From assembly GCF_006345805.1 (NCBI RefSeq), contig NC_043012.1, positions 6,572,001-6,636,000 on the forward strand: a DNA stretch of 64,000 bases, written 5' to 3'. Both the position numbers and the translations under genes were made by a program. Source of the stretch: Octopus sinensis. Its lineage: Eukaryota. Shown in pieces: positions 2,527 through 63,869 of this stretch. Below the pieces are notes generated by a model, which did no database searches, was not told the DNA's origin, and worked only from the letters and a program-made list of their open reading frames with translations. The first letter of the stretch is position 1; each line of letters starts with the position of its first letter.

Positions 2527-4664
2527 CATACACACACACACACACACACACGTATATATTTATATTTAGCACCAAGCCTGTATGTATGTGTATAGTCATT
2601 TAACCCTATTGAATTACAAATATTCCATGCTTAATTTCATTAAATGGATAAAAATGTATCTAATGACTCTCTTATTTATCTTTTGCTTTCCATTAAACAT
2701 GGACAGACTGTGGTCCATCGAAAGTTGTGAATGGTATGCTAATGAGAAAAATTACCTTGACATTTTTTCGTAATGCAGTCCACCTGATGATGAACAAAGT
2801 CTCCTGTAGCCTACTTCTTGCAAACAGTTGCCCAAATCTAGTTTAAATCATTGACAAATGCAGACCATCATTAGTGAACTAATGAGGCAATCTCTTGTAG
2901 CAGATTTGAAACCAAATCACAGTGAAAAGGTTAACCACATAACCTTGTCAAAATCAAATCGAATGGGAATTGTAGTTGTGAGTCCTGTGCCAGTAGCACA
3001 TAAAAAGCACCATCCGATTATGGTCAATGCCAGCTCCTCTGGCCCCTTGTGCTGGTGGCACGTAAAACGCATCCACTACACTCTCAGAGTGGTTGGCGTT
3101 AGGAAGGGCATCCAGCTGTAGAAACACTGCCAGATCAGATTGGGGCCTGGTGCAGCCTCCTGGCTTCCCAGACCCCAGTCGAACCATCCAACCCATTCCA
3201 GCATGGAAAACAGATGTTAAACAATGATGATGATATACTGTTGCTAGAAAACTGAAATAAAATATAAAACCAAAATTCAGAATTTATAAAGGTGTATTAT
3301 GTATCACTTTTATCCTATTCCATCCTTTCTGATCTGAAGAATTTTAAAGCAAAATATTTCTTTAGTGTAGTCTCTGTGAAATTTAGTCTGGCTGCATTCC
3401 GATATTAATATATGGAGTGGAATTAATGCTGGCTTTCATTTGTTTATATTTTGTCTCTTTACTTCATCCTTTTCTCATTAATAATTCAACAGGACAAATG
3501 AAAAATAATTTTGGAAGATCGTTATTATTTCATAAATTATTAAATGGTAAGTATGTCACTGTTATGATATAGAAAAGGGAAGCCAGAGAGATAAATATAA
3601 CAGATATCAGCATTAAATATTCAACGTTCAACAGAGAACAGCTCAGGAATGTCTTTTATTTTTTGGTGGCAGTGCAAAGTATTTTAGCGGGGGCCTAAAA
3701 ATAAATAAATAAATTGATCTGAGGAATCTATGAGTTAGCTTTTAGACTTTTAGAATCAAAGAATTAGAATCAAAAATTAATACTCTGGCAACAATATTCC
3801 ACCCCCACCCCCAAAAAACTAATAAAAAATAAAATAATACAAAACTAAAGTAAAATAAAATCTTTGTTAGGCGCTAGCTGAATGGTTTTGGGTACCAGAC
3901 TCAGGGTCTATCTCCTTCATATATCTTAACTAGAGCATCAAGCATTCTTGTCAACATGTGGTTATAGGTTCAAATCTCACTGCTGTCAGATATATTCATG
4001 GATGGTGAGAGATAAGAAAATCAGTCAAGTAGTGAACAAAATTTTCTTGTGGTATTTAGTTATATTCTAGTTTCAAATCCCTGCCCTAGTTGACTTTGCC
4101 GGTCATTCTTCTGGTGTCTAGAAAACAAGAATGTGTCAAATAGTAGGCATATATAACTGAGTGTACCTTTAAAAGCATTGCTCCAGTATGGTCTTGGCAG
4201 AATAATTGAAAATGGTAGAACATTAGAAGAGTTTTAAAAAATTAACATTTGGCTTGTTAGAAAATAAATACCAGCCAAATACTGAGTATATATAATTATG
4301 ATTAATTGATTATACTTTTAAAACCTTTAGAGGCATTGCTCCAGTATGGTCACCGTGCAAAAACTGAAAGCAGTAGAAATATATCTTTCTTTTACTTATT
4401 TCACTTATTGGACTACAGCCATGCTCGGGTATTGCCCTCAAGGTTTTAGTTGAACAAATTGATTTTTTTAAAAGTGTGGACGAGTTGAACCAGCCCCTAG
4501 GTGCTAATTATTCATAGGGTTGGTTTTCTCTGTATACACAACTGGAATATCCTATTTGGTACTTGCCAACCATAGGCTAGAACCACAGGTTTTTCCAGAC
4601 CTACCTGGTGCATCTCTTTTCAAGTACCTAATTCTATCTGAATCCTTATTTAATTATATATATA

Positions 4665-6450: not shown

Positions 6451-7796
6451 CCAACCCATGCTAGCATGGAGAACGGACGTTAAACGATGATGATGATATA
6501 TATATATATATATATATATATTGGGCCGTTATTGTTTTTTAGCCCCAATCCTCCTCATAATCATGATTATTTTCTAAATTGATTTTACAAAATATTTAAA
6601 AAAAAAAAAAACGATTTTTCGTGGCCGTTGCCAGTACCACCTGACTGGCCCTCATGCTGGTGGAACGTAAAAGCACCCACTACACTCTCAGAGTGGTTGG
6701 CATTAGGAAGGGCTTCCAGCTGTAGAAACTCTGCCAGATCAAGATTGGAGCCTGGTGCAGCCATCTGGTCCGCCAGTCCTCAGTCAAATCGTCCAACCCA
6801 TCCTAGCATGGAAAGTAGATGTTAAACGACGACGACGACGATATATATATATATATATGGACATCAACATTATAGAGAACTTATTCTAAAGAATTTACCA
6901 TATAGACAGAGTTTGTATAGAATATGGAGAAAGTCTTAGTATGGAGCTCCGTATGGGGAGAGTGTAATTCAGAGGATCTGCTGCCATTTCGAAACTTGTA
7001 CATATTTTAGTTAGAAAACATCTGTAATGGACATTAATTTGTAAATTGTTATGGTTTTGAATTTGGTTTACAATATTCTTGATATGAACTCTTGTGTTAA
7101 AACAGATTTTGTTGTATCTTGAGAGCTGTAAACTTAGGGACAAACAGACAGACAGACCGGAATCAGATCTGCAGTAAAGAGAGAGAGAGAGAGAGAGAGA
7201 GACATTCCACGGCTTTTGCTCATATGCTGTCTTCTACATGATAAAAATTGATTTCTTTTGATGAAACTGAAGGCCAAATATGTACACAAGCAGAACTAGC
7301 GGGAGAGAGATTACATGACATTCATGTATTTGTGGAGGGTATTATTAATATAAACTAAATGAATTGGATTTGAGTGGAGATGGAAACCAGATTGCTGACT
7401 CAGCTCTGTGGGAGTTTTATCTGCTGTTCTTCATGTTATTGCTGTTTAACACTGAGTCAGCCCTAATTTAACATACATATGACCAAAGGAATTTCACTCG
7501 TGAGTATCCTGTCTTCTCCACCCCTTTCTCTGACATGGCATAACTATTTAATGCATCCTTTCTTTTTAAAGACATGAAATGATATGACTGAAGGAGATTT
7601 GACTGCTATTTCATGGAAGTTGACTGACCCAATAAATGCTGAATCTTTGGCTTACTGTGGTTGATGTTGTCATTGTTGTTGCTGATGATGTTAAGTCAAC
7701 TTTAATTGAACAAATCTATCAAAAAGACATTCCATCTTTCACTATCCCACGTTTTTTACTCTAGGCATAATGTATCTAAGAATACATTATCCAATC

Positions 7797-8190
7797 TGTC
7801 TTGTGCTGGTGGCACATAAAAAGCACCATCTGAACGTGGCCGATACCAGCGCCGCCTCGACTGGCTTCTGTGCTGGTGCTACATAAAAAGCACCATCCGA
7901 ACGTGGTCGATGCCAGCACCGCTTTGACTGGCTTCTGTGCCGGTGGCACGTTAAAAGCACCAACCGATCGTGGCTGATGCCAGACTCCCCTGGCACCTGT
8001 GTCGGTGGCATGTAAAAAGCACCCACTACACTCGCGGAGTGGTTGGCGTTAGGAAGGGCATCCAGCTGTAGAAACACTGCCAGATCAGACTGGAGCCTGC
8101 TGCAGCCCCTGGCTTCCCAGACCCCGGTTGAACCGTCCAACCCATGCTAGCATGAAAAACGGACGTTAAACGATGATGATGATGATGATG
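7797..8190 (+). repeat. RTE 3'UTR-only copy (5'-truncated LINE tail)
   Basis: Matches 63560-63869, with GTGCCGGTGGCAC-type subrepeats and the ending GGACGTTAAAC(GAT)n. Confidence 0.85.
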
Positions 8191-8729: not shown

Positions 8730-11157
8730 ATAATAATAATAATAATAATGATAACACTCATAATAATAGTTTCAAATTTTGGCACAAGGCCATCAATTTT
8801 GAGGGAGGGGGAAAGTTGATTACATCGACCCCAGTGTTCAAGTGGTACTTATTTTATCGACCCTGAAAGTGTGAAAGGGAAAGCTGACCTCAGCAGAATT
8901 TGAACCCAGAATGTGAAGACGGATGAGATGCCACTAACCATTTTCCCCTTCATGCTAATAATTCCAGAAGCTCATCACGTTAATCAATAAATTAATATTG
9001 AACACAGACAGTAGTCTGTGTCTAATGTAACAACATGCAGCAAATCCTTGTAAATATCGAAGTAATTACAGGATTTCTGTGTCTTTCATTTTTTTCCAAT
9101 TGCCATTAAACATGGAAATCAAATTCATTATTGGAATTTGATTTTCTGACATTCTTTTAAAATAATGATAAGAAGAAATCAATGATGACATTCCCAGAAA
9201 TTAATCAACGCAGGAAAAAGCCAATTCTTCAGTAAAATATTATTTCTTGTTGATTAAGTCTCACTTGTTTACTTGTTCAGAAATGATGTGGTTTCATTTC
9301 TTGATCTTTGTACCATCATGACCTTCATCGTATCATGACCTCTGACCTCAGGCAAGGATGAGACTGATGCAGCTGATACCCAGGATTGAATATCTCCAAT
9401 CCAAAGTCTGCACCATAAAGAACGGTCAACAGGGGGAAGAGAGCCAGCTAGTGATGGTGGTGGTGGGATCTGATTGTAACAGAATGAGCTTTGCTGAGAG
9501 CACTCAAGACTGGGAAAGAGATGAAACAGCAACAAGGGGCAGTGAAGCCCTTCTGAAAATTGGTGGGATCAGTGCAACTGGTGCCCAGCCTGAATATTTT
9601 CAGGTCCTTCTCCTCCTCCTCCTCCTCCTCCATATTCTTCTGTTTGATCTTCTTCTTCTTCTCCCCCTCCTCCTCCCCTTCCTCCCACCACCACCACCAC
9701 CAGAGTTAATTCTTCCAACTTTGCATTCCAAGTTCAAATGTTTCCAAAGTCAACTCTGTCTTTCATTCTTTTGAAATGCAAAATATAAAATAAAAATAAA
9801 CATAGTCCCCTTGATCAAATTAAAGGGGCATATGTTTGTTTTCATTTTTAATTAATTAATTAATTAATTAATTTTTTTACTCTGCATACTCTATCTGTTG
9901 AATGTAAAGTCTGAGAAATGGATCACAGTTTTCTAGAGATGGAGCAAGATTTGAACTCAGAATTCTCAAGACCACATTGCATACTGCAATGTATCCCACC
10001 CAATGCTCTAACGGTTCAACTAATCCACTGTTCTGGACTGGTCATTTTTCTTTTGACCCCGAAAGGATGAAAGGCAAAACTTTGACCTCAGTGGAGTTAG
10101 AATTCAGTGCACAAAGGATGTCAAGAGAAAAACAGGCAAGCAGTATTTAGTTCCAATGCTCCAGTGTTTCTGCCAATTTAATGTGTCTGGGAGAGAGGGT
10201 AGGAGGAAAAGAGAGGGGGAAGAGAGAGGGGAAAGAGGGGAGGTAAAAGATAGAGGGAAAGAGACAAAGAGGGGAAAATGAGAAGAGAGGGAGAGAGAGA
10301 AATGCTAATTCATGTGACAATATATAAACCGCTACACACTTCCAACACAAGATTGTGGGGAGCCTTTTTGTGCTTTTGTAGCGCAATAAAAACAAGTCAT
10401 GTACAGGCATAAAGATATATATATATATCGAGAGAGATAATCATGTGAGCATATATATGTTTGTCTATATATGTATGTATATATATATATGCATATATAT
10501 ATATATATATATGTAACACATGGTACAATTATAAACAGGAAAAATTTTAGCTAATTCTTTGCAGACTGAAATATAAAATAGTAATAACAACCTTAATTGA
10601 CTTTTGAACCATATCAACTTTTCATCAGAGGGGTTCACATCATTCTGACAGTCTTCAAAGAAATGAGCAGCCAAACTGTTTATATACTCAACAAAAGCAG
10701 CAGATACGCTATGAGGGAATCCCTAATTTGCATACTGAAAGAGTTTAACACTTCATAAATACCAGCAGCTTGTCAACAGGGATCTTAGTTCACTCAGTAT
10801 CAAAGTATGATATAATAAATATGTAACATGTGGTATAATTATAAACGGGGCAAATTTTAGCTATATTTCTGCAGATATATCATCATCATCATCATCATCA
10901 TCATTTTTTAGCGTCCGCTTTCCATGCTAGCATGGGTTGGACGGTTCAACTGGGGTCTGGGAAGCCAGAAGGCTGCACCAGGCTCCAGTCTGATCTGGCA
11001 GTGTTTCTATGGCTGGATGCCTTTCCTAACGCCAACCACTCCGTGAGTGTAGTGGGTGCTTTTTACGTGCCACCGGCACAGTTGCCAGATGGGGCTGGTA
11101 AACGGCCACAGTCGGATGGTGCTTTTTACATGCCACCAGCACAGGGGCGAGGCGAGG

Positions 11158-11349
11158 CTGGGTGTCCCAAAAGTCACTGATTGGTTTCAATTTTTAACTT
11201 TAGAAATAAATGCATGAAATTTTGATACAAGTTAATTATTTAACCTTTTCCATCTCTTTTCAGATTTTATCAGAATTTCATGTATTTGTTTGTAAAGTTA
11301 AAGAAGTTATTAAAAACTGAAAGCCATCAGTGACTTTTGGAACACCCTG
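11158..11349. mobile_element. Tc1/mariner-type MITE
   Basis: ~23-bp inverted termini CTGGGTGTCCCAAAAGTCACTGA / TCAGTGACTTTTGGAACACCCTG, followed by TA. It truncates an RTE-tail repeat. Confidence 0.75.
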
Positions 11350-11704: not shown

Positions 11705-12985
11705 GATTGATTGATTGATTGATTCTAGTTTCAGCTTATGAGCTGTGGCCATGCTGGGGCACCGCCATTTGGTGTTGCTACTTGGTTTCACTTCATGGAG
11801 GCTTTCTAGCAACTGCTATTTGGTGCATGAGAGAGTTCGATGCAGCTGCCCTCATCTGCCCCTCCTGCCGTGAAGTTGGTTCATCTGGGACACCTGACAG
11901 GAAGAGATCCAGCTTCATTTTAAAGACATCTGTATCCACCCCATGCAGGTCTCTCAGGTTCTTCAGGAGGATATTGAAGAGCTGTGGGCCTCGGAAGCCC
12001 AGGCTATCACAGAATCTTGTCCTACATCTTGATGGCAGGTTTGGAGTCCTAGGCACCACGCAGTGGCGCCCAGTTCTGGCATTTGCGTAACTCTCGATGC
12101 CAAAGTTCAGGACACTTCCCTCCAGGATCTTCCAGATGTATATTATGGCATATCTTTCCCGCCTTCGCTCCAGGGAATATAATTTTAATCTCTTGAGTCT
12201 TTCCCAGTAGCTTACATTCTGCATAGAGGCTATCTTCTTTGTGTAGCTTCGTTGGATCGCCTCAAGTTCTGTGATCAACTTGACACTGGATGGTGACCAT
12301 AGCTGAGAGCAATAGTCAAAGTGGCTTAGGACAAGTGTCTTCCAGAGGACCATCATGGTTTCTTGTTCTCTTGTTCTAAAGGTTCTAAGAATCCATCCAG
12401 CCAGCCGTCTACATTTCATTGTCAGTTTAGCAACATGTACATGAAAGGTCGCGTCATCACTCATGTGAATACCCAGGTCACGCACTGATTGTGCCTCTGG
12501 GATTGCAATCCCTCCGGGTCCAGTGTATTCATTGGGTATTGCATTCAGTTTTGCATGCTGATAGTATAAAGCTTGAAACTTTCCAGCATTGAACTGCATG
12601 CTATTCTTTTCAGCCCACTTGTATATTTCGTCCAGCTCACATTGCAGGTGTTTAGTGTCCTCAGGGTTCTGTATTGCCTGTGAAACTTTTGTATCATCTG
12701 CATAACTTGTGATCGTGGCTCTCTGCGTGGCTGAGGGCATGTCTGAGAGGGCCATTATGAACAGTAGTGGTCCCAGAACAGTGCCCTGCGGAACACCGCT
12801 CACTATTTGTGTGTTAATGGAGGTGGCCCCATTGGCTACTACCACCTGACTTCTATCCTTCAGAAAGTCATGAAGCCATTCTCCCAGTTTTCCAACTATG
12901 TTGAGATCACGCAGTTTGTGACATATCATTCCATGATCGACTTTATCAAAGGCCTTTGCAAAGTCGAGATATATCACTTCCACAT
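11705..12985 (-). mobile_element. 5'-truncated CR1-like LINE with an open RT/C-terminal ORF (11793-12983) and (ATCA)n tail
   Basis: 396 uninterrupted codons containing YLDFAKAFDKVDH, SGVPQGTVLGPLLF, YADDTK, RDLG and LYSLERRRERY, typical of CR1-group RTs. The short 3'UTR GGCGGTGCCCCAGCATGGCCACAGCTCATAAGCTGAAACTAG is followed by (ATCA)n. Confidence 0.9.
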
Positions 12986-13907: not shown

Positions 13908-14913
13908 GCAAATATTTGGAGTCAGTGCATGTGCAGACTGGTATATTTTGTTTAAAGTATGTATACTCATACAAATAATTGCATGCCTGGATATGTGCAT
14001 ATGTACTTATATACTAAACTTTTGGAAAGTTTTGCATATTTTGACAGTTCCATCAATGGGTTATACCTGTAATAATCTAAATAGTTTTCTCCTTTCTGGT
14101 TTTGAGAAACGTAATTTCTCAAGATTGGTACTAAGGCAGTTTGTTACATTTAGAATTGATCCAATAATTACAGGTATAAATTTGAACTTTGAGTGTATGT
14201 ATGTACATATTTATGTATGTATATGCATGTATGTATGTATGTATGTATGTATGTATGTATGTATGTATGCATACACGCATCAATGTACGCATCTATGTAC
14301 ATCTATGTACAAGTTTGATTGATGAAAAAATAAATAGAATTCAATATACGAGTCATCATCATCATCATCATCGTTTAACGTCCGGTTTCCATGCTGGCAT
14401 AGGTTGGATCTGGCAGTGTTTCTACAGCTGGATGCCCTTCCTAATGCCAACCACTCTGAGAGTGTAGTGGGTGCTTTTTACGTGCCACTGGCACAGGCAC
14501 CAGATGAGGCCAGAAATGAGCACAATCAGCTGGTGCTTTTTATGTGCCACCAGCATGGAAGCCAGTCAAGGTGGCACTGGCATTGGCCACATTCGGATGG
14601 TCTTTTACGTGCCACTGGCAAGGTGATCACAACTACAATTTTCATTTGATTTGGATGTACTTGACTCAATAGGTCTCCTCAAACACGGCATGTCACCCTA
14701 TGAGCCAAGGTACTTTTGAGTGGGCTGGTTATGTGACACTGGTGTAGGTTACAGCTGTAAACTCACTTTATTTGCCGGGTCTTCTCAGTTGCAGCATATC
14801 TCCAGAGGTCTCGGTTTTTTGTCATTGCCTCTGTGAGGCCCAATGTTTGAAGGTCATGCTTCACCACTCATCCCATGTCTTCATGGATCTCCCTGTACCC
14901 TGGACTCCCAAAC

Positions 14914-25038: not shown

Positions 25039-25305
25039 AATAGATATTTAACTGTTTGGTAACCGTCTTCTTCCATTTGTGAAACATGGCAGTGCATACA
25101 CAGTCCGTTCCGTGCAAATGTCGAGTGAGAAAGAAAAATAATGCACATGCTTGTTTGCCTGAGCTGTTCACACCACCACATGTGAGTTGTACTCTTGGAG
25201 CTGGTTGGGATCCAATCCAGCTGCATGCTACTGTTAATGTAGTATTTTCTGTTTCTGGTCTATCCGTTTCAAACCCTTCTATTAGGATGTTACCCCGTGG
25301 AATAT
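25039..25305 (-). CDS. Internal coding exon A3 (short Ig-like domain with a fifth Cys)
   Basis: Acceptor ttttgtgtcctatttttttttccAG and donor GTGAGT. 267 nt, phase 1/1: YIPRGNILIEGFETDRPETENTTLTVACSWIGSQPAPRVQLTCGGVNSSGKQACALFFFLTRHLHGTDCVCTAMFHKWKKTVTKQLNIY. Same C28/W30/P35/C43/C69/C71 register as A1 and A2. Membership of the same transcript across the 27-kb gap is inferred. Confidence 0.87.
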
Positions 25306-28754: not shown

Positions 28755-30011
28755 TTAGGTTGTCAAGAAAGTTCTTGCGGAATTTTAAAATTTTGGTTTT
28801 AAATGATGTATTTTCAATAACTTTGACTTTATATATTATTTTAAAGCCTGTTTTTCGCTCTATCTAACCATGTTACTCTTTCTCTTTTTGAATAATCAGG
28901 CCACTTTTTCCGAAACGTTGAATACAACATGGACAAAAAGCAAATTCGCACAATTTTCTTATTCCAGTTCAAGCTGCTGAAACAGCTCGCAATATAAATG
29001 ATGCGTTTGGCCCAGGAACCATTAATGAATGTACAGCACAATGGTGGTTCAAGAAATTTCGTAGCGGTGTCAAGTGTCTTGAAGATGATAAGCGTAGTGG
29101 TCAGCCATCGGATGTTGACAACGATCAACTAAGAGCCTTAGTCGAAGCCAATCCATGCACAACTGTTTGAGAGCTTGCTTCTGAATTAGACGTAATGTAT
29201 ACGACAATTTCCGACCACTTGAAAGAGGTAGGAAAAACAAAAGTACTTGAGAAATGGGTGCTGCATGAATTGAACAGCAACAAAGAAAAACACCATTTTG
29301 AAGTGTCAGCTTCCCTTCTTTTATGCAACAAGAATGACCCATTTCTTGACCGGATTGTGACTTGCGATGAAAAGTGGCTTCTTTACGATAACTGGCAATG
29401 CTCAGCTCAGTGTTTGGACACTGATGACATTCCACGCCATTTCTTGAAGCCAAAGTTGCACCAAAAGAAGGTCATGGTGACTATTTGGTGGTCTGCGGCC
29501 GGTCTCATCCATCACAACTTTTTGAATCCAGGCAAAACCATTATGGCAGAGAAGTACTGTCAGCAAATGGATGAAATGCATAAGAAACTCCAACAACAAC
29601 AGCCAGCATTGGGCAATAGAAAAGGACCAATTCTTCTCCACGACAACGCTCGGCTGCACATCGCACAACTGACTCTGCAGAAGTTGAACGAATTGGGCTA
29701 CGATATTCTGCCTCATCCGCCATACTCACCAGACCTCTCGCCTACTGACTACCACTTTTTCAAGCATCTCGACAACTTCCTGCATGAGAAATGCTTCAAA
29801 AACCAAGACGATGCCAAACACGCCTTCAAAGACTTCATCGCCACCAGAACGCAGGATTTTTACGCTACTGGCATAAATAAACTTGTTTCACGTTGGCAAA
29901 AGTGTGTTGATTCTGATGGTGTTTATTTCAATTAATAAAGTTTTGTTTGAGCCGAGATATGTGCATCTGAATTTAAAGGTTAAAACCGCAAGAACTTTCT
30001 TGACAACCTAA
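28755..30011 (+). mobile_element. Full-length mariner transposon (Hsmar1/cecropia-like), inactivated
   Basis: Perfect 26-bp TIRs (TTAGGTTGTCAAGAAAGTTCTTGCGG at 28755-28780 and 29986-30011) with TA on both sides (28753-54, 30012-13). Length 1257 bp. It splits a SINE head (...GTGTGGTAAG-TA / TA-GCTTGCTTCCCAACC...). Confidence 0.95.
28929..29935 (+). pseudogene. Mariner D,D34D transposase pseudogene
   Basis: Starts MDKKQIRTIFLFQFKL, then a frameshift near 28975 and an in-frame TGA near 29168. Downstream it is intact, with TCDEKW, HDNAR and HPPYSPDLSPTDYHFF; it closely parallels the Hsmar1 transposase as I recall it. Confidence 0.9.
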
Positions 30012-31428: not shown

Positions 31429-33386
31429 GAAATGCAAGAAAATAAAAATCTAATAAATGCCATCTTTGGAAAATAGATGGAATACAATCTCATAAAATGC
31501 AAACAAAACTGATGATCAGTATTTGAAACCATGACTACAGAATTATTATTCCAGTACCATTAACAATATTAGGTTTTTTCTCTTTTTTTTTTGCTTCTTT
31601 AATCTGAAGAATAAGTTAGAAACAAAATCTCTTTCAAAAGTAATCTGGTTGTTGTCTTCTGTCTTGTTTATAAGAAAAATATTTTAAGTATGACAGAATG
31701 TCTATAAAAGCCAAATTTTAAAGATCCACTATTTGGATTTGGTTCGTTCTGTTGTTCCATTGTTGTTGTACTTTACAAGCATTCACTGATCTCCAGACCA
31801 ATGTTCTGTTAGAACATATTTTAAAGTATTTGGCTGGATATGAAGACACAGAAAGACTAAAATACATGGCGTCATAGAAAACATATTCTTTCCTCTTCCC
31901 CCCCCCACTGTGTCTAGAGTAATATCTAAAGTCAATAATTAAACTTTATTGCAGCAATTTCCTATGTTTTATTTAGTCAAGGGAATGTTTTTCATTTACC
32001 ATTCATTCATCTATTTTTCTAGAAAATTTACTAATAAAGCCTCTTACTAAACCATAGATAAGAAATGACTAAAAGTCTCTACATTTAATGTCAATGTAAT
32101 ATGATTATAACATGAAATTTGATTACCAATTTTAGCATCATCATGTGATATCACTTGTATTTATTATTATTATTATTATTATTATTGTTATTCTTCTTCT
32201 TCTTCGTATTATTATTATTAATTATTATTTTTATTATTATCTCATTATTTTCATTCAATGCAGGATAAGGAAAAGATAATTCTTGCTGAAAATTATAATA
32301 GATTGTACATTGATTGCGTATCATAGGACTTAATTCTTATCTGTTGCAGAAATAGCCATCTTGACAAGCTTTTTTTTAATGCTAAAAATGGTCAAAATAG
32401 TTTTAACCCCCGCCCCCTCCACCAAAAAAAAAAAAACAATGACACAAGCATTAGATAAAAGATGGTACCATTCTTGATAATTTAACCATAATTTTATTGT
32501 GTTTACTTGTTTCAACTGTATTGAGCAATAAAATGCTTATATTAATGACAAAAATAAAACACGACAAAAAGAAAAACAAAACTAAAAAAATAGAATTGCT
32601 ATCTAAGGCAATGAATGATGAAATCTAATTTTTCAAATTGCATTTTCTTTTTTTGTATTTTTCCATAAAAATATGGAAAACAAATTAAAGAATTCTAAGT
32701 AGCATCTTTAATTGATTTCAAGTATAATTTAGAATATTTGTGGGACTTCTTCTAGTGGTGATTGCAGACAAAAGCACTGGAAACGAGGCAGTATTGATTA
32801 AACTCTAAACAAATATATTGCAATGCTCCATCTTAATTTGAATTGTAATTTATTGTAATCATTGCAAAACAATTAAGAAAAAAAGGGAAGAAATTAAAAC
32901 AAAAATCAAAACTTTGGAAGGGAGTTACATCATTGTTTTAGGGGTTAGTGTCTAAAGAGCTCCTTAAAAATAAGGAATTCCTTAATCAAAAGAAGGAATT
33001 TGTAAATTTATTATTACACAACATAAATAGATTGAACAGTAAATAAATAAAGGATTTCCTATGACCGAGTGGTTAAGAAGCTTGCTTTGCAATCCTGTGG
33101 TTTCAAGTTCAGTTCCACTGCATGACACCCTGGGTAAGTGTTTTCTACTATAGCCCTGGGCCAAACAATGCTTTGTGAGAGAATCTTGTAGATGGAAGCT
33201 GCGTGCAAACCAGGAAACAAGTTATATATAGAAATCTCTCTCTCTCTATATATATATTTTCTCATACAAAATGGAGATGAGACCAATGTTCCCATGTGGC
33301 AGCCTTGAAAATTGTCATGGGATTTCTCTTCACATGAAACCATTAATAGCCTTGTTAACTCACAAATATAAAAAAGTATACATATT

Positions 33387-33439
<53 letters not shown>

Positions 33440-33442
<3 letters not shown>

Positions 33443-33765
33443 GACTGGCCTCATGCCGGTGGCACATAAAAAGCACCATCCAATCGTGGCCATTGCCAGC
33501 CTCGCCTGACCCCCGTGCCAGTGGCACGTAAAAAGCACCATCCGATTGTGGCCGTTTGCTAGCCTCGTCTGGCACCTGTGCCGGTGGCACGTAAAAAGCA
33601 CCCACTACACTCACGGAGTGGTTGGCGTTAGGAAGGGCATCCAGCCGTAGAAACATTGCCAGATCAGACTGGGCCTGGTGCAGCCTTCTGGCTTCCCAGA
33701 CCCCAGTTGAACCGTCCAACCCATGCTAGCATGGAAAGCAGACGCTAAACGATGATGATGATGAT
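33440..33765 (+). repeat. RTE 3'UTR-only copy
   Basis: Near-identical to the terminal ~300 bp of the LINE at 63.6-63.9 kb. Confidence 0.88.
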
Positions 33766-37303: not shown

Positions 37304-37501
37304 ATATATATATACATATATCATCATCATCATCGTTTAGCGTCCGTTTTCCATGCTAGCATGGGTTGGACGGTTCTACTGGGGTCTGTGAAGCCAGAAG
37401 GCTTCATCAGGCCCAGTCAAATCTGGCAGTGTTTCTACGGCTGGATGCCCTTCCTAACGCCAACCACTCCGTGAGTGTAGTGGGTGCTTTTTACGTGGGT
37501 G

Positions 37502-37552
<51 letters not shown>

Positions 37553-37554
37553 TC

Positions 37555-37775
37555 TCTTTATTTGTTTCTGCCATTTGACTGTGGCCATGCCGGAGCACTG
37601 CCTTTAGTCAATCGAATAAATCAACCCCAGGACTTATTCTTTGTAAGCCTAGTACTTATTCTATCGATCTCTTTTGCCGAACTGCTAAGTTACAGGGACG
37701 TAAACACACCAACATCAGTTGTCAAGAGATGTTGGGGGGACAAACACAGACACACAAACATATACACACATACAC

Positions 37776-48309: not shown

Positions 48310-48830
48310 ATCATCATCATCATCATCATCATTGTTTAATGTCCACTTTCCATACAGGCATGGGTTGGATGATTTGATTGAGGTCTGGTGAACCAGATGG
48401 CTGCACCAGGCTCCAATCTGATCTGGCAGAGTTTCTACAGCTGGGTGCCCTTCCTAATGCCAACTACTCTGAGAGTGTAGTGGGTGCTTTTATGTGCCAC
48501 CAGCACAAGGGCCAGTCAGGCGTACTGGCAATGGCCATGCTCAAATGGTGCTTTTTATGTGCCATCTGCACAAGAGCCAGTCCAGCGGCACTGGCAATGA
48601 CCTTGCTCGAATGTTTTTTCACGTGCCACCCAGCACAAGTGCCAGTAAGGCAACGCAGGTAATGATCACGCCCTAATTGTGCTTTTTATGTGCCACTGGC
48701 ACAGAAGCCAGTTTGTTGCTCTGGCAACAATCACGCTCAGATGGTACTCTTAGCGCTCCACTAGCATGGATGCCAGTCATCGAATTTGATTTCGATTTCG
48801 ATTTCACTTGCCTCAACAGGTCTTCACAAG
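48310..48830 (-). repeat. RTE 3'UTR-only copy
   Basis: (CAT)n followed by the reverse complement of the LINE tail. Other copies (approximate): 2950-3235, 6620-6840, 21330-21830, 63950-64000 (+); 10880-11157, 14355-14830, 24630-24925, 36380-36960, 37320-37500, 38330-38660, 53087-53610 (-). Confidence 0.85.
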
Positions 48831-49599: not shown

Positions 49600-50520
49600 T
49601 CATCTGTCTCGCTTAATGACTACAAAGATGACTCATGAGTCCAGCTTTACTGAGGCAGAGTCTTGCACAGACACTGCATGTCAGCATCATAGGAAGACCC
49701 TTCCCATCTGGAAGTGTAACAGTGATGCCCTTCCTGATATCCCTCCTTACTTTCTCATGCGCAACTCGTGATTTCTCAAAAGTAGCTGTCCCCTTGTGCA
49801 CAATCCTTCTCCACCTGCTATGATCAGTAGCTATGCCCTCCCATGTGTCAGGAGAGATGCAAGCATCTCTTAAAGAAGCCTTCAGCAAGTCCTTATACCT
49901 CTTTTTTGGTTTATGTGGGGGTCGTTCTCCTTTAGTTAACTCTCCATAAAAGAGTTGTTTTGGCATCCTTGAATCCTTCATCCTGATCAGATGACCACTC
50001 CATCTGAGCCTTTGCTTTAACACAAGAACTTCTATACTTTCGCACCGAGAGCCTTCCAATATTTCAAGATCACTGATGCAGTCCTCCCACTTAATGCTGT
50101 AGATCCATCTGAGACACATCTGATGGAAACATTCCAGTTGTTTAAGATGGTATCGAAATGTGACCCACGTCTCGCAGGCATAGAGAAGAGAAGGGAGCAT
50201 GCATGCGTTGTACACCTTTAACTTTGTCTTTCTGCATAGGTCTCACCGACTCCAGAGGTGCCTTTCTAGCCTTCCAAAAGCATCTCTTGCTTTCATAATT
50301 CAGTATGGAATTTCATCATCCAAATTGCTATATCTATTAACAGTGCTTCCCAGGTAGACAAACTGATCAACTACATCAAGTCGTTTACCTTACACATAGA
50401 TATTTGGTACACTATACTGCTTACCAGGGGCAGGTTGGTACATGACAACAGTTTTCTTGAGACTGACTGTCAATCCTAAGGCAGTACAAGCATCAGAGAA
50501 TGCATTCAAAACGTGTCGCA
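49600..50520 (-). pseudogene. RTE (BovB-like) LINE 3' fragment, decayed
   Basis: LGLTVSLKKTVVM...FVYLGS...KLKVYNACMLPSLLYACETW...RLRWSGHLIRM...CSVCARLCLSKAGLMSHLCSH. Three in-frame stops upstream of the 200-aa ORF at 49613-50215. Confidence 0.88.
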
Positions 50521-52415: not shown

Positions 52416-52682
52416 AGTTGAAGCTGACGTTGCGCGTATTGACAATCTGCTTTAGAGGATGTGTACCATTGCAAGTGCATGATGAAATGTTCAGGTGTTT
52501 ACTAAACTCCAGTAAAACAGATACTTCCGAAACACCCATGTAATTAAGACTGCCACATGTTAGTTGCAGATTAGCTTCCGGATTTCCACCTTTCCATGCA
52601 CATACTACAGTCAGTGTTTCGTTACCATATAAAGATTCGTTTGGGCCTATAACTTTCATTTCCGGACGTCCAATTGGAGGAT
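52416..52682 (-). CDS. Internal coding exon A2 (short 4-Cys Ig-like domain)
   Basis: Acceptor ttttggccttctttgcAG and donor GTAAGT. 267 nt, phase 1/1: YPPIGRPEMKVIGPNESLYGNETLTVVCAWKGGNPEANLQLTCGSLNYMGVSEVSVLLEFSKHLNISSCTCNGTHPLKQIVNTRNVSFN. Five N-x-S/T sequons. Confidence 0.9.
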
Positions 52683-52813: not shown

Positions 52814-52916
<103 letters not shown>

Positions 52917-53608
52917 TTCTTTTACTATTTTATTTGTTTCAGTCATTTTAACTGTACCCATGCCGGAGCACTGCCTTTAGTCAAACAAATTGACCCCTGG
53001 ATCGCTAACATACAGCGACATAAACACACCAACATTGGTTGTCAAGTGATGGTGGAGGGACAAACTCAGACACACAAAGACATACATCGTCATCATCATC
53101 ATCATCATCATCATCATTATCGTTTAACGTCCGCTTTCTATGCTGGCATGGGTTGGACGATCTGACTGAGGACTGGCGAGCCAGATGGCTGCACCAGGCT
53201 CCAATCTGATCTGGCAGTGTTTCTACAGCTGGATGCCCTTCCTAATGCCAACCACTCCGAGAGTGTAGTGGGTACTTTTACATGTCACCAGTACAAGGGC
53301 CAGTCAGGCGGTACTGGCAACGGCCATGCTCAATTGGTGCTTTTTATGTGCCACCTGCACAGGTGCCAGTCCAGCGGCACTGGCAATGACCTTGCTCGAA
53401 TATTGTTTTTCACGTGCCACCAGCACAAGTGCCAGTAAGGCGAAGCTGGTGACGATCATGCTTGAATGGTGTTTTTTACATGCCACCGGCACGGGAGCCA
53501 GTCAGCGGCCCTAGCAACGATCATGCTCGGATGGTGCTCTTAGCGCTCCACTAGCACGGATGCCAGTCATGTGGTGTTGTCATCGAATTTGATTTTGATT
53601 TCACTTGC

Positions 53609-56300: not shown

Positions 56301-56600
56301 AAGTAACGTGGACGGTGATCTCTTTTGATTTGACTAACTTCTCGGTCATTTGTGTGAATTGGTTTGTTGCTACACAATAGAACTCTTGTAAGTTGTGTTT
56401 CCTGTTGACTTGGTGGAATGTCAAATGACCATCTGCATCACTATTTGTATCCTGCATGCTGCTTCCTTCGGTTGGAAACCATTCATATGTTGTTGGTGGG
56501 GGATTGCCTTCGGGATCAGATCGGCAAATTATCTGTTCGGTTTGGTTCTCAAACCAAGGAAATACTGTTGAGGGAAACACTTTGGGTGTTGCTGGGGGAT
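56301..56600 (-). CDS. Internal coding exon B of the same gene (canonical C2/I-set-like Ig domain)
   Basis: Acceptor ttttgcttactttttcacAG and donor GTAAGT. 300 nt, phase 1/1: YPPATPKVFPSTVFPWFENQTEQIICRSDPEGNPPPTTYEWFPTEGSSMQDTNSDADGHLTFHQVNRKHNLQEFYCVATNQFTQMTEKLVKSKEITVHVT. Canonical Ig hallmarks: C26, GNPPP loop, W41, L-x-F E strand, Y-C76-x-A-x-N. Confidence 0.93.
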
Positions 56601-59079: not shown

Positions 59080-59346
59080 AATAAACTGTCATTGACTGTG
59101 ATGTGTTTTTACTAATTCCTGGATGAAGCCCTTCACAAATACACTGAAAATCATTCAAATCCCGCTTGACATCTATCGCGAGCATGGTTACAGAAACTCC
59201 AATGCTGATTGTCGCACCGCAGGAGAGCCGCACTAGGGCAGACGGAAACCCTCCGGACCAGTTGCATGACACGAGCAGTCGCTCGTTTTCTAACAATGGA
59301 ATCTCTGGATTGAAGCCTTCTATTACAGGCTTACCTGGTGGTGTAG
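59080..59346 (-). CDS. Internal coding exon A1 of a multi-Ig-domain cell-surface protein (short 4-Cys Ig-like domain)
   Basis: Acceptor ttcttttttttctctgcAG (AG at 59348-59347) and donor GTAAGT (59079). 267 nt, phase 1/1, open frame: [89 protein letters not shown]. Aligns without gaps to the exons at 52.5 kb and 25.1 kb. Confidence 0.9.
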
Positions 59347-60592: not shown

Positions 60593-63500
60593 CACCCGCC
60601 CTCCCACCCCCACACGCATGCCGGAAGTTCCTATTCTCTGCCATTCCGGGGTTGCTTCCCATGAAGACTGCAAATGTTCTCACCATCCCTACCCCTCCCT
60701 ACCCCTAGTCTCGACCTATGTAAGGTAATGTTCATACAGTGCAAAATATGAAAGGCTAGCGTTATGCAGGTTGTACTGAAGGCTACTTTACTACTTCATT
60801 TCTTCACATGAACTCTGCCAAATGCGAGCTTTCTTTTCAGGTACACGAAGCTACTGTCCACCATCCCAGGGTCTCTAGAGCCCATGCCTCCCACACCCTC
60901 AGGGTTGGCACCCTCAACGTTGGCACTCTGAAAGGTAGGTCTGGTGAGATAGTCGAGATGCTTGAACGGAGATGTGTGGATATATGTTGCATGCAAGAAA
61001 TAAGGTGGAGAGGAGGATCAGCTAGGTTCCTCACAGGCAAGGAACGCAGGTACAAGATTTTCTGGGCTGGGAACACTGACGGGGTTGGTGGCGTGGGTAT
61101 ACTTATCGCTGAGAAATGGGTAGATAAAGTAATTGAGGTAATCAGAGTATGTGACAGAATACTTAAGATTAGATTAGTGCTTCATCATAGTTTAGCAACC
61201 ATTATATCAGCCTATGCTCCTCAGTCGGGGCTACCCGATGGACAGAAAGACCGATTCTATGACACTCTACTGCAGACTACCTCGTTGACGAATGACAGAG
61301 ACCTTATCTTTGTGGCTGGTGACTTCAATGGTCACGTTGGACGACATGCTGGGGGCTTCCATGGCGTACATGGAGGCTATGGCTATGGCTCCCGCAACGA
61401 GGAGGGAACCAGGCTGCTGGAGTTCTGCGATGCAAATAATCTTATGATTTGCAACACTAACTTCAGGAAACCTACCAGCCACCTAGTCACTTACCAATCG
61501 GGCCAACATACCAGCCAAATTGACTACATCCTTACAAGGCAAAGGGAGAGATGGCTGCTTATAAATGCCAAAACCTTCCCAGGTGAAGAATGTACCCCAC
61601 AACATAGACTGGTAGTTAGTGACTTTAGGATCAGGACTAGGAGGACAACCAGAAGACGACAAATATGGAGAAGAAGGATCTGGAAGCTTAAAGATCCTGC
61701 AAATGGACAGAGATTTAGGGACATATTACTTGAAGCCTCTGACGAAGGGGTCATACCCAATGACTGGTGTAGCAGTATAATAGTCAACTGCTACAAAGGT
61801 AAAGGTGATGCCCTAGATACAAATAACTACAGAGGTATCAAGCTGTTGGACCAGGTGATGAAGGTTACGGAGAGGGTCATAGCCCAACTAATTAGAGAGA
61901 GAGTTAGTTTAGATGAGATGCAGTTTGGGTTTGTGCCAGGGAAAAGTACTACTGATGCTATATTCCTGGTAAGGCAGCTGCAGGAGAAATACCTAGCCAA
62001 AGATAAGCCCCTGTACCTGGCTTTTGTTGACATGGAGAAAGCCTTCGACAGGGTCCCCCGATCCCTTATCTGGTGGGCAATGAGGAAACTAGGGATAGAT
62101 GAATGGTTAGTGAGAGCTGTGCGGGCCATGTACAGGGACGCCGCTAGTAGGGTGAGGGTTGGAAATGTGTACAGTGAAGAATTCCGGGTAGAGGTAGGAG
62201 TCCACCAAGGCTCAGTACTCAGCCCCCTCCTATTTATCATAGTCCTCCAGGCAATAACGGAGGAATTCAAGACAGGATGCCCTTGGGAGCTCCTCTATGC
62301 TGATGACCTTGCTCTAATTGCTGAGTCACTATCAGAACTGGAGGAGAAGTTTCAGGTGTGGAAACAAGGATTAGAATCGAAGGGCCTCAGAGTCAATCTA
62401 GCTAAAACCAAAGTTGTAATCAGTAGGAAGGTAGACAAATCACAAACACCTTCAGGTAGATGGCCCTGCTCGATCTGTAGAAAAGGTGTAGGTAGAAACT
62501 CTATAAGATGCACCAAGTGTAAGCTATGGACACATAAGAGATGCAGCAATGTCAAAGGAAGGCTAACTAGGAAGATGGTTTTTGTATGTGGCAGATGCTC
62601 AGGAACAATAAACACTGAAAATGCTCTGAGACCAACTTCCGTCACTTTCCAGGGAGAAAAACTAGAAATAGTTGATAGTTTCCGTTACCTAGGTGACCAA
62701 GTCAGCAGCGGGGGCGGGTGTGCTGAAAGTGTAACTGCTAGAGTAAGAATAGCTTGGGCAAAGTTCAGAGAGCTCTTACCTCTGCTGGTGACAAAAGGCC
62801 TCTCGCACAGAGTGAAAGGCAGACTGTATGATGCGTGTGTACGAACAGCCATGCTACATGGCAGTGAAACATGGGCCGTGACTGCTGAGGATATGCGTAA
62901 GCTCGCTAGAAATGAAGCCAGTATGCTCCGATGGATGTGTAATGCCGGTACTCACACTCGGCAGAGTGTAAGTACCTTGAGAGAAAAGCTGGACCTAAGA
63001 AGCATCAGTTGTGGTGTGCAAGAGAGACGTTTGCGCTGGTATGGTCATGTGGTGAGAATGGATGAAGATAGTTGTGTGAAAAAGTGCCACACCCTAGCGG
63101 TTGAGGGAACCTGTGGAAGAGGCAGACCCAGGAAAACCTGGGACGAGGTGGTGAAGCACGACCTTCGAACTTTAGGTCTCACTGAGGAAATGACTAGAGA
63201 CCGAGACCTCTGGAAGTGTGCTGTGCGCGAGAAGACCGGCAGGACAAGTGAGTCCATAACCCGTGGCCTTCTACATGGGATGGAGCCAGCCTACGTATGC
63301 ATACCTTCCCTTCTTGGGACACAAAACTCTACTTGTGAAGACGTGATGAGGTAAGTGAGGATCAGAATCGAAATTGATCAATGGAAATTGCGGATGTGCT
63401 ACCAGTGCCAGTGGCATGTCAAAACTCTGCTTGTGAAGACCCGTTGAGGCAAGTGACGATCAGAATCGAAATCGATCAATGGAAATCGATCAATGGAAAT

Positions 63501-63869
63501 TGCAGATGTGTTACCAGTGCCGGTGGCATGTAAGAGAACTTTCCGTTTCGCGACCGTTGCCAGCACCGCCCCGTTTTGTGTCCGTTGCCAGCCTCGCCTG
63601 GCCCTCGTGCCGGTGGCACATAAAAAGCACCATCCGTTCGTGGCCGTTTGCCAGCTCTGTCTGGCACCAGTGCGGGTGGCACGTAAAAAGCACCCACTAC
63701 ACTCACGGAGTGGTTGGCGTTAGGAAGGGCATCCAGCCGTAGAAACACTGCCAGATTTGACTGGGCCTGATGAAGCCTTCTGGCTTCACAGACCCCAGTA
63801 GAACCGTCCAACCCATGCTAGCATGGAAAACGGACGCTAAACGATGATGATGATGATGATGATGATGAT
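60593..63869 (+). mobile_element. RTE-clade LINE, near full length, antisense to the Ig gene
   Basis: The ORF above is followed by a ~500-bp 3'UTR with internal tandem subrepeats, ending GGACGCTAAAC(GAT)n at ~63843-63869. The 5' boundary is approximate and no TSD was identified. Confidence 0.88.
60808..63354 (+). CDS. RTE-clade LINE ORF: APE endonuclease plus reverse transcriptase with an inserted PHD finger
   Basis: 848-aa open ORF. APE motifs TLNVGTL, MQEIRW, GVGILI, AYAPQ, AGDFNGH, QIDYIL, QHRLVV. RT motifs YRGIKLL, QFGF, FVDMEKAFD, GVHQGSVLSPLLF, YADD, YLG. RTE-type C-terminus GRGRPRKTW. Confidence 0.95.
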   Translation: MNSAKCELSFQVHEATVHHPRVSRAHASHTLRVGTLNVGTLKGRSGEIVEMLERRCVDICCMQEIRWRGGSARFLTGKERRYKIFWAGNTDGVGGVGILIAEKWVDKVIEVIRVCDRILKIRLVLHHSLATIISAYAPQSGLPDGQKDRFYDTLLQTTSLTNDRDLIFVAGDFNGHVGRHAGGFHGVHGGYGYGSRNEEGTRLLEFCDANNLMICNTNFRKPTSHLVTYQSGQHTSQIDYILTRQRERWLLINAKTFPGEECTPQHRLVVSDFRIRTRRTTRRRQIWRRRIWKLKDPANGQRFRDILLEASDEGVIPNDWCSSIIVNCYKGKGDALDTNNYRGIKLLDQVMKVTERVIAQLIRERVSLDEMQFGFVPGKSTTDAIFLVRQLQEKYLAKDKPLYLAFVDMEKAFDRVPRSLIWWAMRKLGIDEWLVRAVRAMYRDAASRVRVGNVYSEEFRVEVGVHQGSVLSPLLFIIVLQAITEEFKTGCPWELLYADDLALIAESLSELEEKFQVWKQGLESKGLRVNLAKTKVVISRKVDKSQTPSGRWPCSICRKGVGRNSIRCTKCKLWTHKRCSNVKGRLTRKMVFVCGRCSGTINTENALRPTSVTFQGEKLEIVDSFRYLGDQVSSGGGCAESVTARVRIAWAKFRELLPLLVTKGLSHRVKGRLYDACVRTAMLHGSETWAVTAEDMRKLARNEASMLRWMCNAGTHTRQSVSTLREKLDLRSISCGVQERRLRWYGHVVRMDEDSCVKKCHTLAVEGTCGRGRPRKTWDEVVKHDLRTLGLTEEMTRDRDLWKCAVREKTGRTSESITRGLLHGMEPAYVCIPSLLGTQNSTCEDVMR

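What the first reader, a model, noticed from the sequence alone, without database searches (positions are those of the whole stretch)
52416..52682. Atypical short Ig domain: core Trp and Tyr-corner apparently replaced by a second disulfide
Seen: A1, A2 and A3 are each 89 aa and align with no gaps at only ~27-31% pairwise identity by hand count. Invariant positions include N21, L24, V26, C28, W30, G32, P35, L41, C43, G44, G50, L64, C69 and C71. Established: canonical Ig domains have a B-strand Cys, a C-strand Trp six residues after the loop Pro, and an F-strand Y-x-C, as exon B does. Here the Trp position is Leu41, a Trp sits at Cys+2, and new Cys residues occupy W+2 (C43) and the Tyr position (C69). 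In the Ig fold W+2 and the Y of YxC are cross-strand neighbours. Inference: C28-C71 is the canonical bond and C43-C69 is an extra C-F cross-strand bond that stabilises a compact domain with only 43 residues between the canonical Cys.
Basis: partly seen in the sequence, partly recalled or inferred. Interest (0 to 1): 0.72.

Follow-up and report, generated by a model that had tools for sequence, protein, structure and literature searches.

The report
Mollusc Ig domain with second disulfide
The exon encodes one of three tandem C2-type immunoglobulin domains of a cephalopod cell-surface protein, and they carry an extra, co-evolving cysteine pair that is shared across molluscs, so this is a modest, apparently undescribed variant of a very well known fold.

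Summary
Window 52416-52682 on the minus strand is a 267-nt phase-1/phase-1 exon. Two paralogous exons lie at 59080-59346 and 25039-25305. They align without gaps at 26-31% identity, and the listed residues are invariant.

The domain is an Ig domain of the C2 type. Pfam does not see the three copies. A profile built from them finds 69 proteins, and Pfam calls many of those domain copies C2-set_2 or Ig_3. A 52-sequence alignment gives an AlphaFold model with pLDDT 85.7 and seven strands, A B C C' E F G. Foldseek's top matches are Ig domains.

The extra cysteines are not special to this gene. All named carriers are molluscs: bivalves, gastropods and a cuttlefish. Across 158 domain copies, C42 and C68 are present together in 116 and absent together in 23. 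They are the top covarying pair.

The idea that the disulfide replaces the Trp fails. Most four-Cys copies keep the core Trp. Cephalopod copies have Leu there and a Trp at Cys+2. The closest named relatives are vertebrate VSIG10-like 2 domains, which carry a different extra pair between strands A and G. Cys-Cys distances could not be measured.

The parts
52416..52682 (-). The finding, called A52 here. It is a 267-nt phase-1/1 exon encoding the third extracellular domain, a four-Cys C2-type Ig domain. In 88-aa numbering the key codons are: Cys27 at 52600-52602, Trp29 at 52594-52596, Leu40 at 52561-52563, Cys42 at 52555-52557, Cys68 at 52477-52479, Cys70 at 52471-52473 and His74 at 52459-52461. 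There are five N-x-S/T sequons.
   Evidence: The domain is 75% identical to residues 322-409 of the transcript-derived orthologue P0001. The AlphaFold model has pLDDT 85.7.
59080..59346 (-). A59, a paralogous four-Cys Ig exon encoding the first A-type domain. It corresponds to orthologue residues 132-220.
   Evidence: It is 76% identical to P0001.
56301..56600 (-). B56, a canonical Ig exon of 300 nt with phase 1/1. It has C...W...F-Y-C and lies between A59 and A52 in the mRNA.
   Evidence: Pfam Ig_3 at 3.3e-7. It is 55% identical to P0001 residues 222-320.
25039..25305 (-). A25, a paralogous four-Cys Ig exon that follows A52 directly in the orthologous mRNA across an intron of about 27 kb. It carries a fifth Cys at 25145-25147 and has Phe instead of the family His at position 74.
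   Evidence: It is 66% identical to P0001 residues 406-497.

Best explanation
The three exons encode tandem extracellular C2-set immunoglobulin domains of a large type I membrane protein of the Ig superfamily. In the orthologue the order is an N-terminal region, A, B, A, A, about five further Ig domains, one fibronectin type III domain, a transmembrane helix and a tail. [quoted passage not shown] It adds a second, intra-sheet disulfide between the last residue of strand C (Cys42, two residues after the canonical Trp position) and the residue that normally forms the tyrosine corner at the start of strand F (Cys68). These two positions are lateral neighbours in the G-F-C-C' sheet, at the end of the sandwich next to the C-C' turn and the E-F loop. 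The bond would therefore take over the job of the tyrosine corner and pin the C-C' hairpin to strand F. This four-Cys form is an old, mollusc-wide variant of a C2-set_2-like domain. In cephalopods the domain was shortened further. The core Trp on strand C became Leu, and a Trp sits two residues after the B-strand Cys, facing the same core. Shown here: the exon structure, the homology, the taxonomic spread, the covariation and the predicted fold. Inferred: the actual bond, its buried structural role and the adhesion or recognition function.
For: Exon structure and paralogy. A profile of the three copies finds 69 proteins at E <= 1e-3, 20 of them at E <= 1e-10. The orthologue P0001 was assembled from transcripts about 5 kb long and has no introns. 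It contains A-B-A-A in tandem, then Ig_3, fn3 and a hydrophobic segment. Column counts over 158 domain copies: C27 152, C70 145, C42 119, C68 122, W40 111 and L40 27. State counts: CCCC 114 and CxxC 23. Where the extra pair is absent, position 68 is F, Y, L, I or V, the usual tyrosine-corner-type residue. The 42-68 pair is the top covarying pair by a factor of two, and at the protein level 48 proteins have only CC and 10 have only xx. Ig identity: 36 of 52 aligned relatives hit Ig_3 and 31 of 52 hit C2-set_2, with a best E of 2e-9. The profile hits Dscam, SYG-2 and CD276 Ig domains in the PDB, and the SYG-2 D3 alignment spans profile positions 2-87. AlphaFold gives pLDDT 85.7 and pTM 0.75, with strands at 7-11, 22-28, 37-42, 45-50, 52-58, 65-74 and 77-86. 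That is the C2 topology, with C27 in strand B, C42 at the end of C, and C68 and C70 in F. The top Foldseek matches are Ig domains (probability 1.0, TM up to 0.77). The strand register comes from the literature. The C-strand Trp and the F-strand Cys are backbone-paired anchors of the GFCC' sheet (PMC12051499), so W+2 faces Cys-2. A C-F cross-strand disulfide has a precedent in CD4 domain 2 (PMC4354306). Five N-glycosylation sequons in A52 fit an extracellular, oxidising location.
Against: No coordinates were available, so no S-S or C-beta distance was measured. The good model depends on an alignment that I selected for the four-Cys pattern. Foldseek E-values are weak, with a best of 8.5e-3 and none at or below 1e-3. 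Pfam finds nothing in the window's own copies even at E = 10, so Ig membership rests on transitive homology. The domain copies are related to each other, often as tandem repeats within one protein, which inflates covariation counts. Cross-strand disulfides are often strained and reducible, so a purely structural role is not assured. There are no expression or protein data for this species.
Confidence: 0.75

Rival explanations
1. The bond is the same, C42-C68, but it works as a redox-labile or force-sensitive switch (an allosteric cross-strand disulfide) rather than a static staple. Reducing it would loosen the C-C' hairpin and change ligand binding or oligomerisation of the receptor, as proposed for CD4 domain 2.
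For: It would link adjacent antiparallel strands, and this class of bond is described as metastable. The CD4 D2 bond Cys130-Cys159 joins strands C and F (PMC4354306). The extra Cys can slide two to three residues into the C-C' turn in some relatives, for example W-T-G-V-C and W-T-S-G-C, which suggests a bond near the surface.
Against: Positions W+2 and Cys-2 face the core in canonical Ig domains. In CD4 D2 the canonical B-F bond is missing, but here it is retained. The pair is nearly invariant across about 100 copies in at least 10 mollusc species, which is the usual pattern for structural cystines. No redox data exist.
Confidence: 0.13
2. The extra cysteines do not pair with each other. They are either free, or cross-paired (27-68 and 42-70), or they make inter-domain or inter-molecular bonds.
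For: No distance or chemical mapping is available. A25 and its orthologue have a fifth Cys. Some cephalopod paralogues carry an additional A-strand Cys. Odd cysteines therefore exist in this family.
Against: C27 and C70 persist whenever C42 and C68 are absent, and C42 and C68 are gained and lost together. Cross-pairing or independent free thiols would not give this pattern. The alignment to solved Ig domains puts 27 and 70 on the canonical pair.
Confidence: 0.06
3. The three A exons are mutually exclusive alternative exons, as in Dscam, rather than tandem domains. Their low identity would then reflect isoform diversity.
For: They have the same length and phase and are paralogous, so any one could replace another without breaking the reading frame.
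Against: The transcript-derived orthologue P0001 and its cluster members, 1185-1214 aa long on contigs of about 5 kb, contain all three in series with exon B between the first and second. Bivalve relatives have 4-7 such domains in series.
Confidence: 0.02

Closest known systems
CD80-like C2-set Ig domain (Pfam PF08205, C2-set_2), as found in nephrin/SYG-2, nectins and the constant-type domains of the B7 family
   Same: It has the same B-strand and B-C loop motif, L-x-C-x-x-x-G-G-x-P-x-A-x-L-x-W. It has the seven-strand C2 topology and a spacing of 42-53 residues between the canonical cysteines. Of the 52 aligned family members, 31 hit this model, with a best E of 2e-9. The best full-domain match in the PDB is SYG-2 D3.
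   Different: The Pfam model does not detect the cephalopod copies. The family carries an additional Cys at W+2 and a Cys in place of the Tyr or Phe at Cys-2. The four PDB alignments that were shown do not have this pair.
Vertebrate VSIG10-like 2 (VSIG10L2) Ig domains, some of which are annotated 'hemicentin-1-like' in fish and frogs
   Same: These are the only non-mollusc proteins identified among the profile hits whose source names I looked up. The profile-profile match has probability 98.1% and E 9e-14 over 87 columns. They share C-S-W-x-G-G-x-P-x-A and C-x-A-x-H-P, including the Trp at Cys+2 that the cephalopod copies have. The proteins have a similar multi-Ig plus fn3 architecture.
   Different: They lack the C42-C68 pair: position 68 is F or Y and position 42 is S or G. 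Instead they have a different invariant extra pair, one Cys in strand A and one in strand G. Most keep the strand-C Trp. Orthology of the whole gene was not tested.
CD4 domain 2 cross-strand disulfide (Cys130-Cys159)
   Same: It is a disulfide between strands C and F of the same sheet of a C2-type Ig domain (PMC4354306).
   Different: In CD4 D2 the F-strand partner is the canonical Cys and the B-strand Cys has been lost, so this is the only bond in the domain. Here the canonical bond is kept and the extra bond sits one register step, two residues, further along. There is no sequence relationship beyond the superfamily.
Ig domains with other supernumerary disulfides: ICAM-1 and VCAM-1 domain 1, CD2/SLAM domain 2, TIM, pIgR
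   Same: The general principle is the same: a second cystine added to a small Ig domain. This comparison comes from my own knowledge and was not tested here.
   Different: The positions are different (the B-C/F-G region, A-G, or C-C'). None that I know of uses W+2 and the tyrosine-corner position.

Membership tests
Immunoglobulin superfamily, C2-set topology | A Cys on strand B and a Cys on strand F, about 40-55 residues apart, forming the inter-sheet bond. | tested here: met
   C27 and C70 are 43 residues apart in all three copies. They align to the canonical pair of SYG-2 D3. They are present in 152 and 145 of 158 relatives. The bond itself is inferred.
Immunoglobulin superfamily, C2-set topology | A two-sheet sandwich with strands A-B-E and G-F-C-C', and no D strand. 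| tested here: met
   The AlphaFold model has pLDDT 85.7 and seven strands, with a C-C' hairpin at 37-42 and 45-50 followed directly by E. The top Foldseek matches are Ig domains, TM 0.6-0.77, but the E-values are weak. This is a prediction, not an experiment.
Immunoglobulin superfamily, C2-set topology | A conserved Trp on strand C that packs on the disulfide. | tested here: not met
   Position 40 is Leu in all three window copies and in the cuttlefish orthologue. It is Trp in 111 of 152 relatives. A Trp is present at Cys+2 on strand B instead.
Immunoglobulin superfamily, C2-set topology | A tyrosine corner (Y or F at Cys-2 on strand F). | tested here: not met
   Position 68 is Cys in the window copies and in 122 relatives. 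It is F, Y, L, I or V only where Cys42 is also absent.
Pfam C2-set_2 (PF08205) / Ig_3 (PF13927) | A score above the curated threshold in hmmscan. | tested here: not met
   The window's three A domains give no Pfam hit even at E = 10. Of the 52 aligned homologues, 31 match C2-set_2 and 36 match Ig_3 at E <= 0.01. Membership is therefore transitive only.
VSIG10-like 2 type Ig domain | The shared motifs C-x-W-x-G-G-x-P-x-A and C-x-A/G-x-H-P, with significant profile similarity. | tested here: met
   hhalign gives probability 98.1% and E 9.2e-14 over 87 columns. The motifs are visible.
VSIG10-like 2 type Ig domain | The extra Cys pair between strands A and G that is invariant in the vertebrate copies. 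| tested here: not met
   C12 and C86 are invariant in the 9 vertebrate copies. They are absent from the three window copies.
VSIG10-like 2 gene family (orthology) | Reciprocal best match and a shared full-length architecture, including the N-terminal V-set domain. | not tested
   The window holds only four internal exons. Pfam found no V-set hit in the N-terminal 130 residues of P0001, whereas bivalve P0005 and fish P0012 do have one.
Cross-strand (C-F) disulfide of the CD4 D2 type | Two cysteines on adjacent antiparallel strands, directly opposite each other, within bonding distance. | not testable with these tools
   The register argument comes from the literature and the strand assignment from the model. 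The tools return no atomic coordinates.

The most novel reading that the evidence does not exclude
The four-Cys domain is an undescribed subtype of the C2-set Ig domain. It would be ancestral to molluscs, and perhaps to a wider group of lophotrochozoans. A buried or semi-buried C-F cross-strand disulfide would replace the tyrosine corner, relax the need for the core Trp, and act as a redox- or force-sensitive latch in adhesion receptors. Vertebrate VSIG10L2 would have solved the same problem independently with an A-G staple.
Probability: 0.12. Interest if true: 0.55.

Novelty: new variant of a known kind. Interest (0 to 1): 0.33.

Why it matters
It adds a defined, testable variant to the catalogue of ways the Ig fold is held together. 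The tyrosine corner, and in cephalopods also the core Trp, are given up while a second cystine is present. The homologous vertebrate domain uses a different second cystine. This makes a natural experiment on which core elements of the Ig fold are interchangeable. It also has a practical side: current Pfam models miss these cephalopod domains, so Ig-superfamily counts in cephalopod genomes are probably underestimates. It does not reveal a new kind of molecule or mechanism.

Tried and rejected
1. Pfam on the three A domains at E <= 10 gave nothing.
2. The word-indexed homologue search with the joined A-B-A protein gave nothing. With the 52-sequence alignment it gave only two short ORF fragments. 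That tool is too insensitive for this family.
3. AlphaFold with the three-sequence alignment gave pLDDT 40 and was discarded.
4. A second HMM iteration on the 69 proteins drifted into ordinary Ig domains (259 hits, including six in P0001), so I kept the first iteration.
5. I scanned for further A-type or other phase-1 Ig exons in the window and found only the four. tblastn with the orthologue shows that the N-terminal exons and the exons after residue 497 lie outside the window.
6. I tried to identify the species through exact look-ups of the exon-spanning ORF. Nothing was on record. The look-up of P0099 was uninformative.
7. Literature searches for a described four-Cys mollusc Ig domain, or for an Ig disulfide at W+2 and Cys-2, found nothing relevant. 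This library is incomplete, so the absence is weak evidence.
8. The Dscam-like alternative-exon idea was rejected on the orthologous mRNA.
9. I tested whether loss of the core Trp goes with the extra disulfide. It does not. Trp is lost both in four-Cys copies (gastropods and cephalopods) and in two-Cys copies (Esox, frog, Solemya, Mytilus).

Full report
**What is in the sequence**

The finding lies on the minus strand. Window 52416-52682 is bounded by an AG acceptor and a GTAAGT donor. It is 267 nt long and is read in phase 1 at both ends, the usual arrangement for Ig-domain exons. Two more exons have the same length, phase and splice signals, at 59080-59346 and 25039-25305. A 300-nt exon with canonical Ig features lies at 56301-56600. 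Every one of these exons ends in T, and three of them (all but the 59-kb copy) begin with AT, so the codon across their junctions is Tyr. Pairwise tblastn gives E = 1e-11 to 1e-14, against E of about 0.3 or worse for all other matches in the window.

Below I number residues from the first full codon.

**What it belongs to**

Pfam finds nothing in the three A domains even at E = 10, while exon B is Ig_3. A profile of the three copies, searched against 1.84 billion representative proteins, finds 69 proteins at E <= 1e-3.

- The best hit is P0001 (E 1e-98), a 1214-residue protein assembled from intron-less contigs of about 5 kb, that is, from transcripts. Its 90% cluster includes a protein of the cuttlefish Acanthosepion pharaonis.
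- P0001 reads: N-terminal region, A, B, A, A, then Ig_3, I-set and Ig_2 domains, one fn3 domain, a hydrophobic segment and a tail.
- The four window exons match its residues 132-497 at 55-76% identity, in the same order. No other part of it is found in the window.
- The A exons are therefore tandem domains of one cell-surface protein, not alternative exons. A52 is joined directly to A25 across about 27 kb of intron filled with repeats.

**The wider family**

All named carriers of the same cysteine pattern are molluscs.

- Bivalves: Mytilus coruscus and M. galloprovincialis, Pecten maximus ('nephrin-like'), Argopecten irradians ('CEACAM5-like'), Tegillarca granosa and Solemya velum.
- Gastropods: Physella acuta, Batillaria attramentaria, Aplysia californica and Biomphalaria glabrata.
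- Cephalopods: the cuttlefish.

These proteins often carry 3-7 such domains in series. Pfam recognises the non-cephalopod copies: of the 52 aligned domains, 36 hit Ig_3 and 31 hit C2-set_2, with a best E of 2e-9. The profile of these 52 domains hits Ig domains of Dscam, SYG-2 (nephrin) and CD276 in the PDB. The domain is an Ig domain of the CD80-like C2 type. The cephalopod copies have diverged beyond the reach of the current models.

**The cysteines**

I extracted 158 domain copies with the three-sequence HMM.

| Position | Residue counts |
|---|---|
| 27 | Cys in 152 |
| 70 | Cys in 145 |
| 42 | Cys in 119 |
| 68 | Cys in 122 |

- 114 copies have all four cysteines, and 23 have only the canonical two. 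Only about three are mixed, and in at least two of those the C-strand Cys is simply displaced two residues into the turn.
- Where the extra pair is missing, position 68 is F, Y, L, I or V, the ordinary tyrosine-corner type of residue.
- Positions 42 and 68 are the strongest covarying pair in the domain. The APC-corrected mutual information is 0.61, against 0.30 for the next pair. At the protein level, 48 proteins have only the paired state and 10 have only the unpaired state.
- Relatedness among tandem copies inflates these numbers. Even so, the all-or-none pattern in several lineages is what a 42-68 bond predicts. It is not what 27-68 with 42-70, or independent free thiols, would predict.

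**Fold and geometry**

- With three sequences AlphaFold gave pLDDT 40.
- With the 52-sequence alignment it gave pLDDT 85.7 and pTM 0.75. The strands are at 7-11, 22-28, 37-42, 45-50, 52-58, 65-74 and 77-86.
- That is A, B, C, C', E, F, G, the C2 topology. Cys27 is in B, Cys42 is the last residue of C before a two-residue turn, and Cys68 and Cys70 are in F.
- The top Foldseek matches are Ig domains (sDscam Ig1, PTP-delta and PTP-sigma Ig, SYG-2 D4, ICAM-1, MAG, Siglec-10), with probability 1.0 and TM 0.6-0.77. Weaker non-Ig beta-sandwich matches come lower in the list. E-values are 8.5e-3 or worse, so no solved structure is close.
- In the HMM alignment to SYG-2 D3, the solved domain's Trp aligns to position 40, His to 42, the Tyr of Y-x-C to 68 and the Cys to 70.
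- The IgStrand paper states that the C-strand Trp and the F-strand Cys are backbone-paired anchors of the G-F-C-C' sheet (PMC12051499).
This remains the main gap.

- The extra bond does not stand in for the core Trp. Position 40 is Trp in 111 copies and Leu in 27. The typical bivalve copy is C-x-V...W-x-C...C-x-C, with both Trp and the extra pair.
- The cephalopod signature is C-x-W...L-x-C...C-x-C-x-G-x-H. It occurs in P0001, P0002, P0022, P0030, P0041, P0051 and P0067, and where a source name is known (P0001's cluster and P0030) that source is a cuttlefish.
- Trp at Cys+2 is also present in vertebrate relatives together with the strand-C Trp, and in one Tegillarca copy.
- Several gastropod four-Cys copies and several two-Cys copies have no Trp at either place.
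- A shift of the bulky core residue from strand C to strand B in cephalopods is therefore a reasonable inference, but it is not tied to the disulfide.
- The domain is also not unusually short for a C2-set domain. Its 42-43-residue Cys-Cys spacing is nevertheless the shortest in the family, where 47 and 50 dominate.

**Closest named relatives**

[quoted passage not shown] Their domains match the mollusc profile with hhalign probability 98.1% and E 9e-14 over 87 columns. They share C-S-W-x-G-G-x-P-x-A and C-x-A-x-H-P. They lack the 42-68 pair and instead have an invariant Cys in strand A and another in strand G. Homologous domains in the two phyla thus carry different second cysteine pairs. The nearest mechanistic precedent for a C-F bond is CD4 domain 2 (Cys130-Cys159, PMC4354306). 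There the canonical B-F bond has been lost and the F-strand partner is the canonical Cys.

**Mechanism and verdict**

Most likely (about 0.75) each A domain has two disulfides. One is the canonical inter-sheet bond. The other is an intra-sheet C-F bond at the end of the sandwich where the tyrosine corner normally sits. It would pin the C-C' hairpin to strand F in a trimmed, heavily glycosylated extracellular domain; A52 has five sequons. The alternatives are a labile, regulatory version of the same bond (about 0.13) and other pairings or free thiols (about 0.06).

The protein is probably an adhesion or recognition receptor. That rests only on its architecture.

I found no paper describing this variant, no dedicated Pfam family, and no example among the PDB alignments shown. 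InterPro, CDD and SMART could not be checked.

This is a new variant of a known kind. It is a tidy piece of fold evolution and a blind spot in annotation, not a surprise of principle, since supernumerary disulfides are common in Ig domains.

Noticed in passing
window 25145-25147 (-), within exon 25039-25305: The third A domain has a fifth cysteine, at residue 53 on the predicted E strand. It is conserved in the cuttlefish orthologue (P0001, '...GVPACAHSFF...'). This odd Cys could be a free thiol or form an inter-domain or inter-chain bond. The same domain has Phe where the family has the conserved His at F-strand Cys+4.
   Followed up: partly
relatives P0012, P0016, P0027, P0040, P0061, P0066 (alignment A3): The homologous vertebrate VSIG10-like 2 domains carry a different invariant extra cysteine pair, one Cys in strand A (P-x-G-x-P-x-C) and one in strand G (K-x-C-x-x-x-L). 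The C-F pair seen in molluscs is absent.
   Followed up: partly
relatives P0022, P0030, P0041 (cephalopod paralogues): Other cephalopod proteins with the C-x-W...L-x-C...C-x-C signature have one more Cys before strand B ('SSEICEEK', 'SQSGICAGK', 'KSEICVGE'). That gives five cysteines with no obvious partner for the fifth.
   Followed up: no
window 56301-56600 (-): Exon B has F-Y-C on strand F, so Phe is at the tyrosine-corner position. The cuttlefish orthologue has Y-Y-C. This exon is the least conserved of the four, at 55% identity to the orthologue.
   Followed up: partly
window 60808-63354 (+): An uninterrupted 848-codon ORF of a non-LTR retrotransposon lies in the intron upstream of the first A exon, on the opposite strand. 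It contains an endonuclease domain, a reverse transcriptase (RVT_1, 1e-31) and a weak PHD-like finger.
   Followed up: partly
window 11793-12983 (-) and 49613-50215 (-): Further retroelement remnants. The first is a 396-codon ORF with the C-terminal part of RVT_1 (2.5e-18). The second is a 200-codon ORF that has no Pfam hit but resembles the region after the reverse transcriptase in such elements.
   Followed up: partly
window 29195-29935 (+): A fragment of a mariner-type DNA transposase (Pfam Transposase_1, 1.4e-25; DDE_3) lies inside the 27-kb intron between A52 and A25.
   Followed up: partly
window 2954-3196, 7787-8140, 10932-11180, 14404-14649, 33360-33719, 37366-37578, 48378-48662, 53217-53438, 63476-63811 (both strands): A short interspersed repeat recurs at least nine times. 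It is recognisable because it translates to '...LQSDLAVFLQLDALPNANHS.SVVGAFY.PPAQ...'. Long (TA)n, (CA)n and similar microsatellites are also abundant. One (TA)n run, at about 52820-52890, lies just upstream of the finding's exon.
   Followed up: no
P0001 residues 1-131 (orthologue; not in the window): The N-terminal region of the cuttlefish orthologue is Cys-rich and basic, and Pfam finds no V-set hit there. The bivalve (P0005) and fish (P0012) relatives begin with a V-set domain.
   Followed up: no
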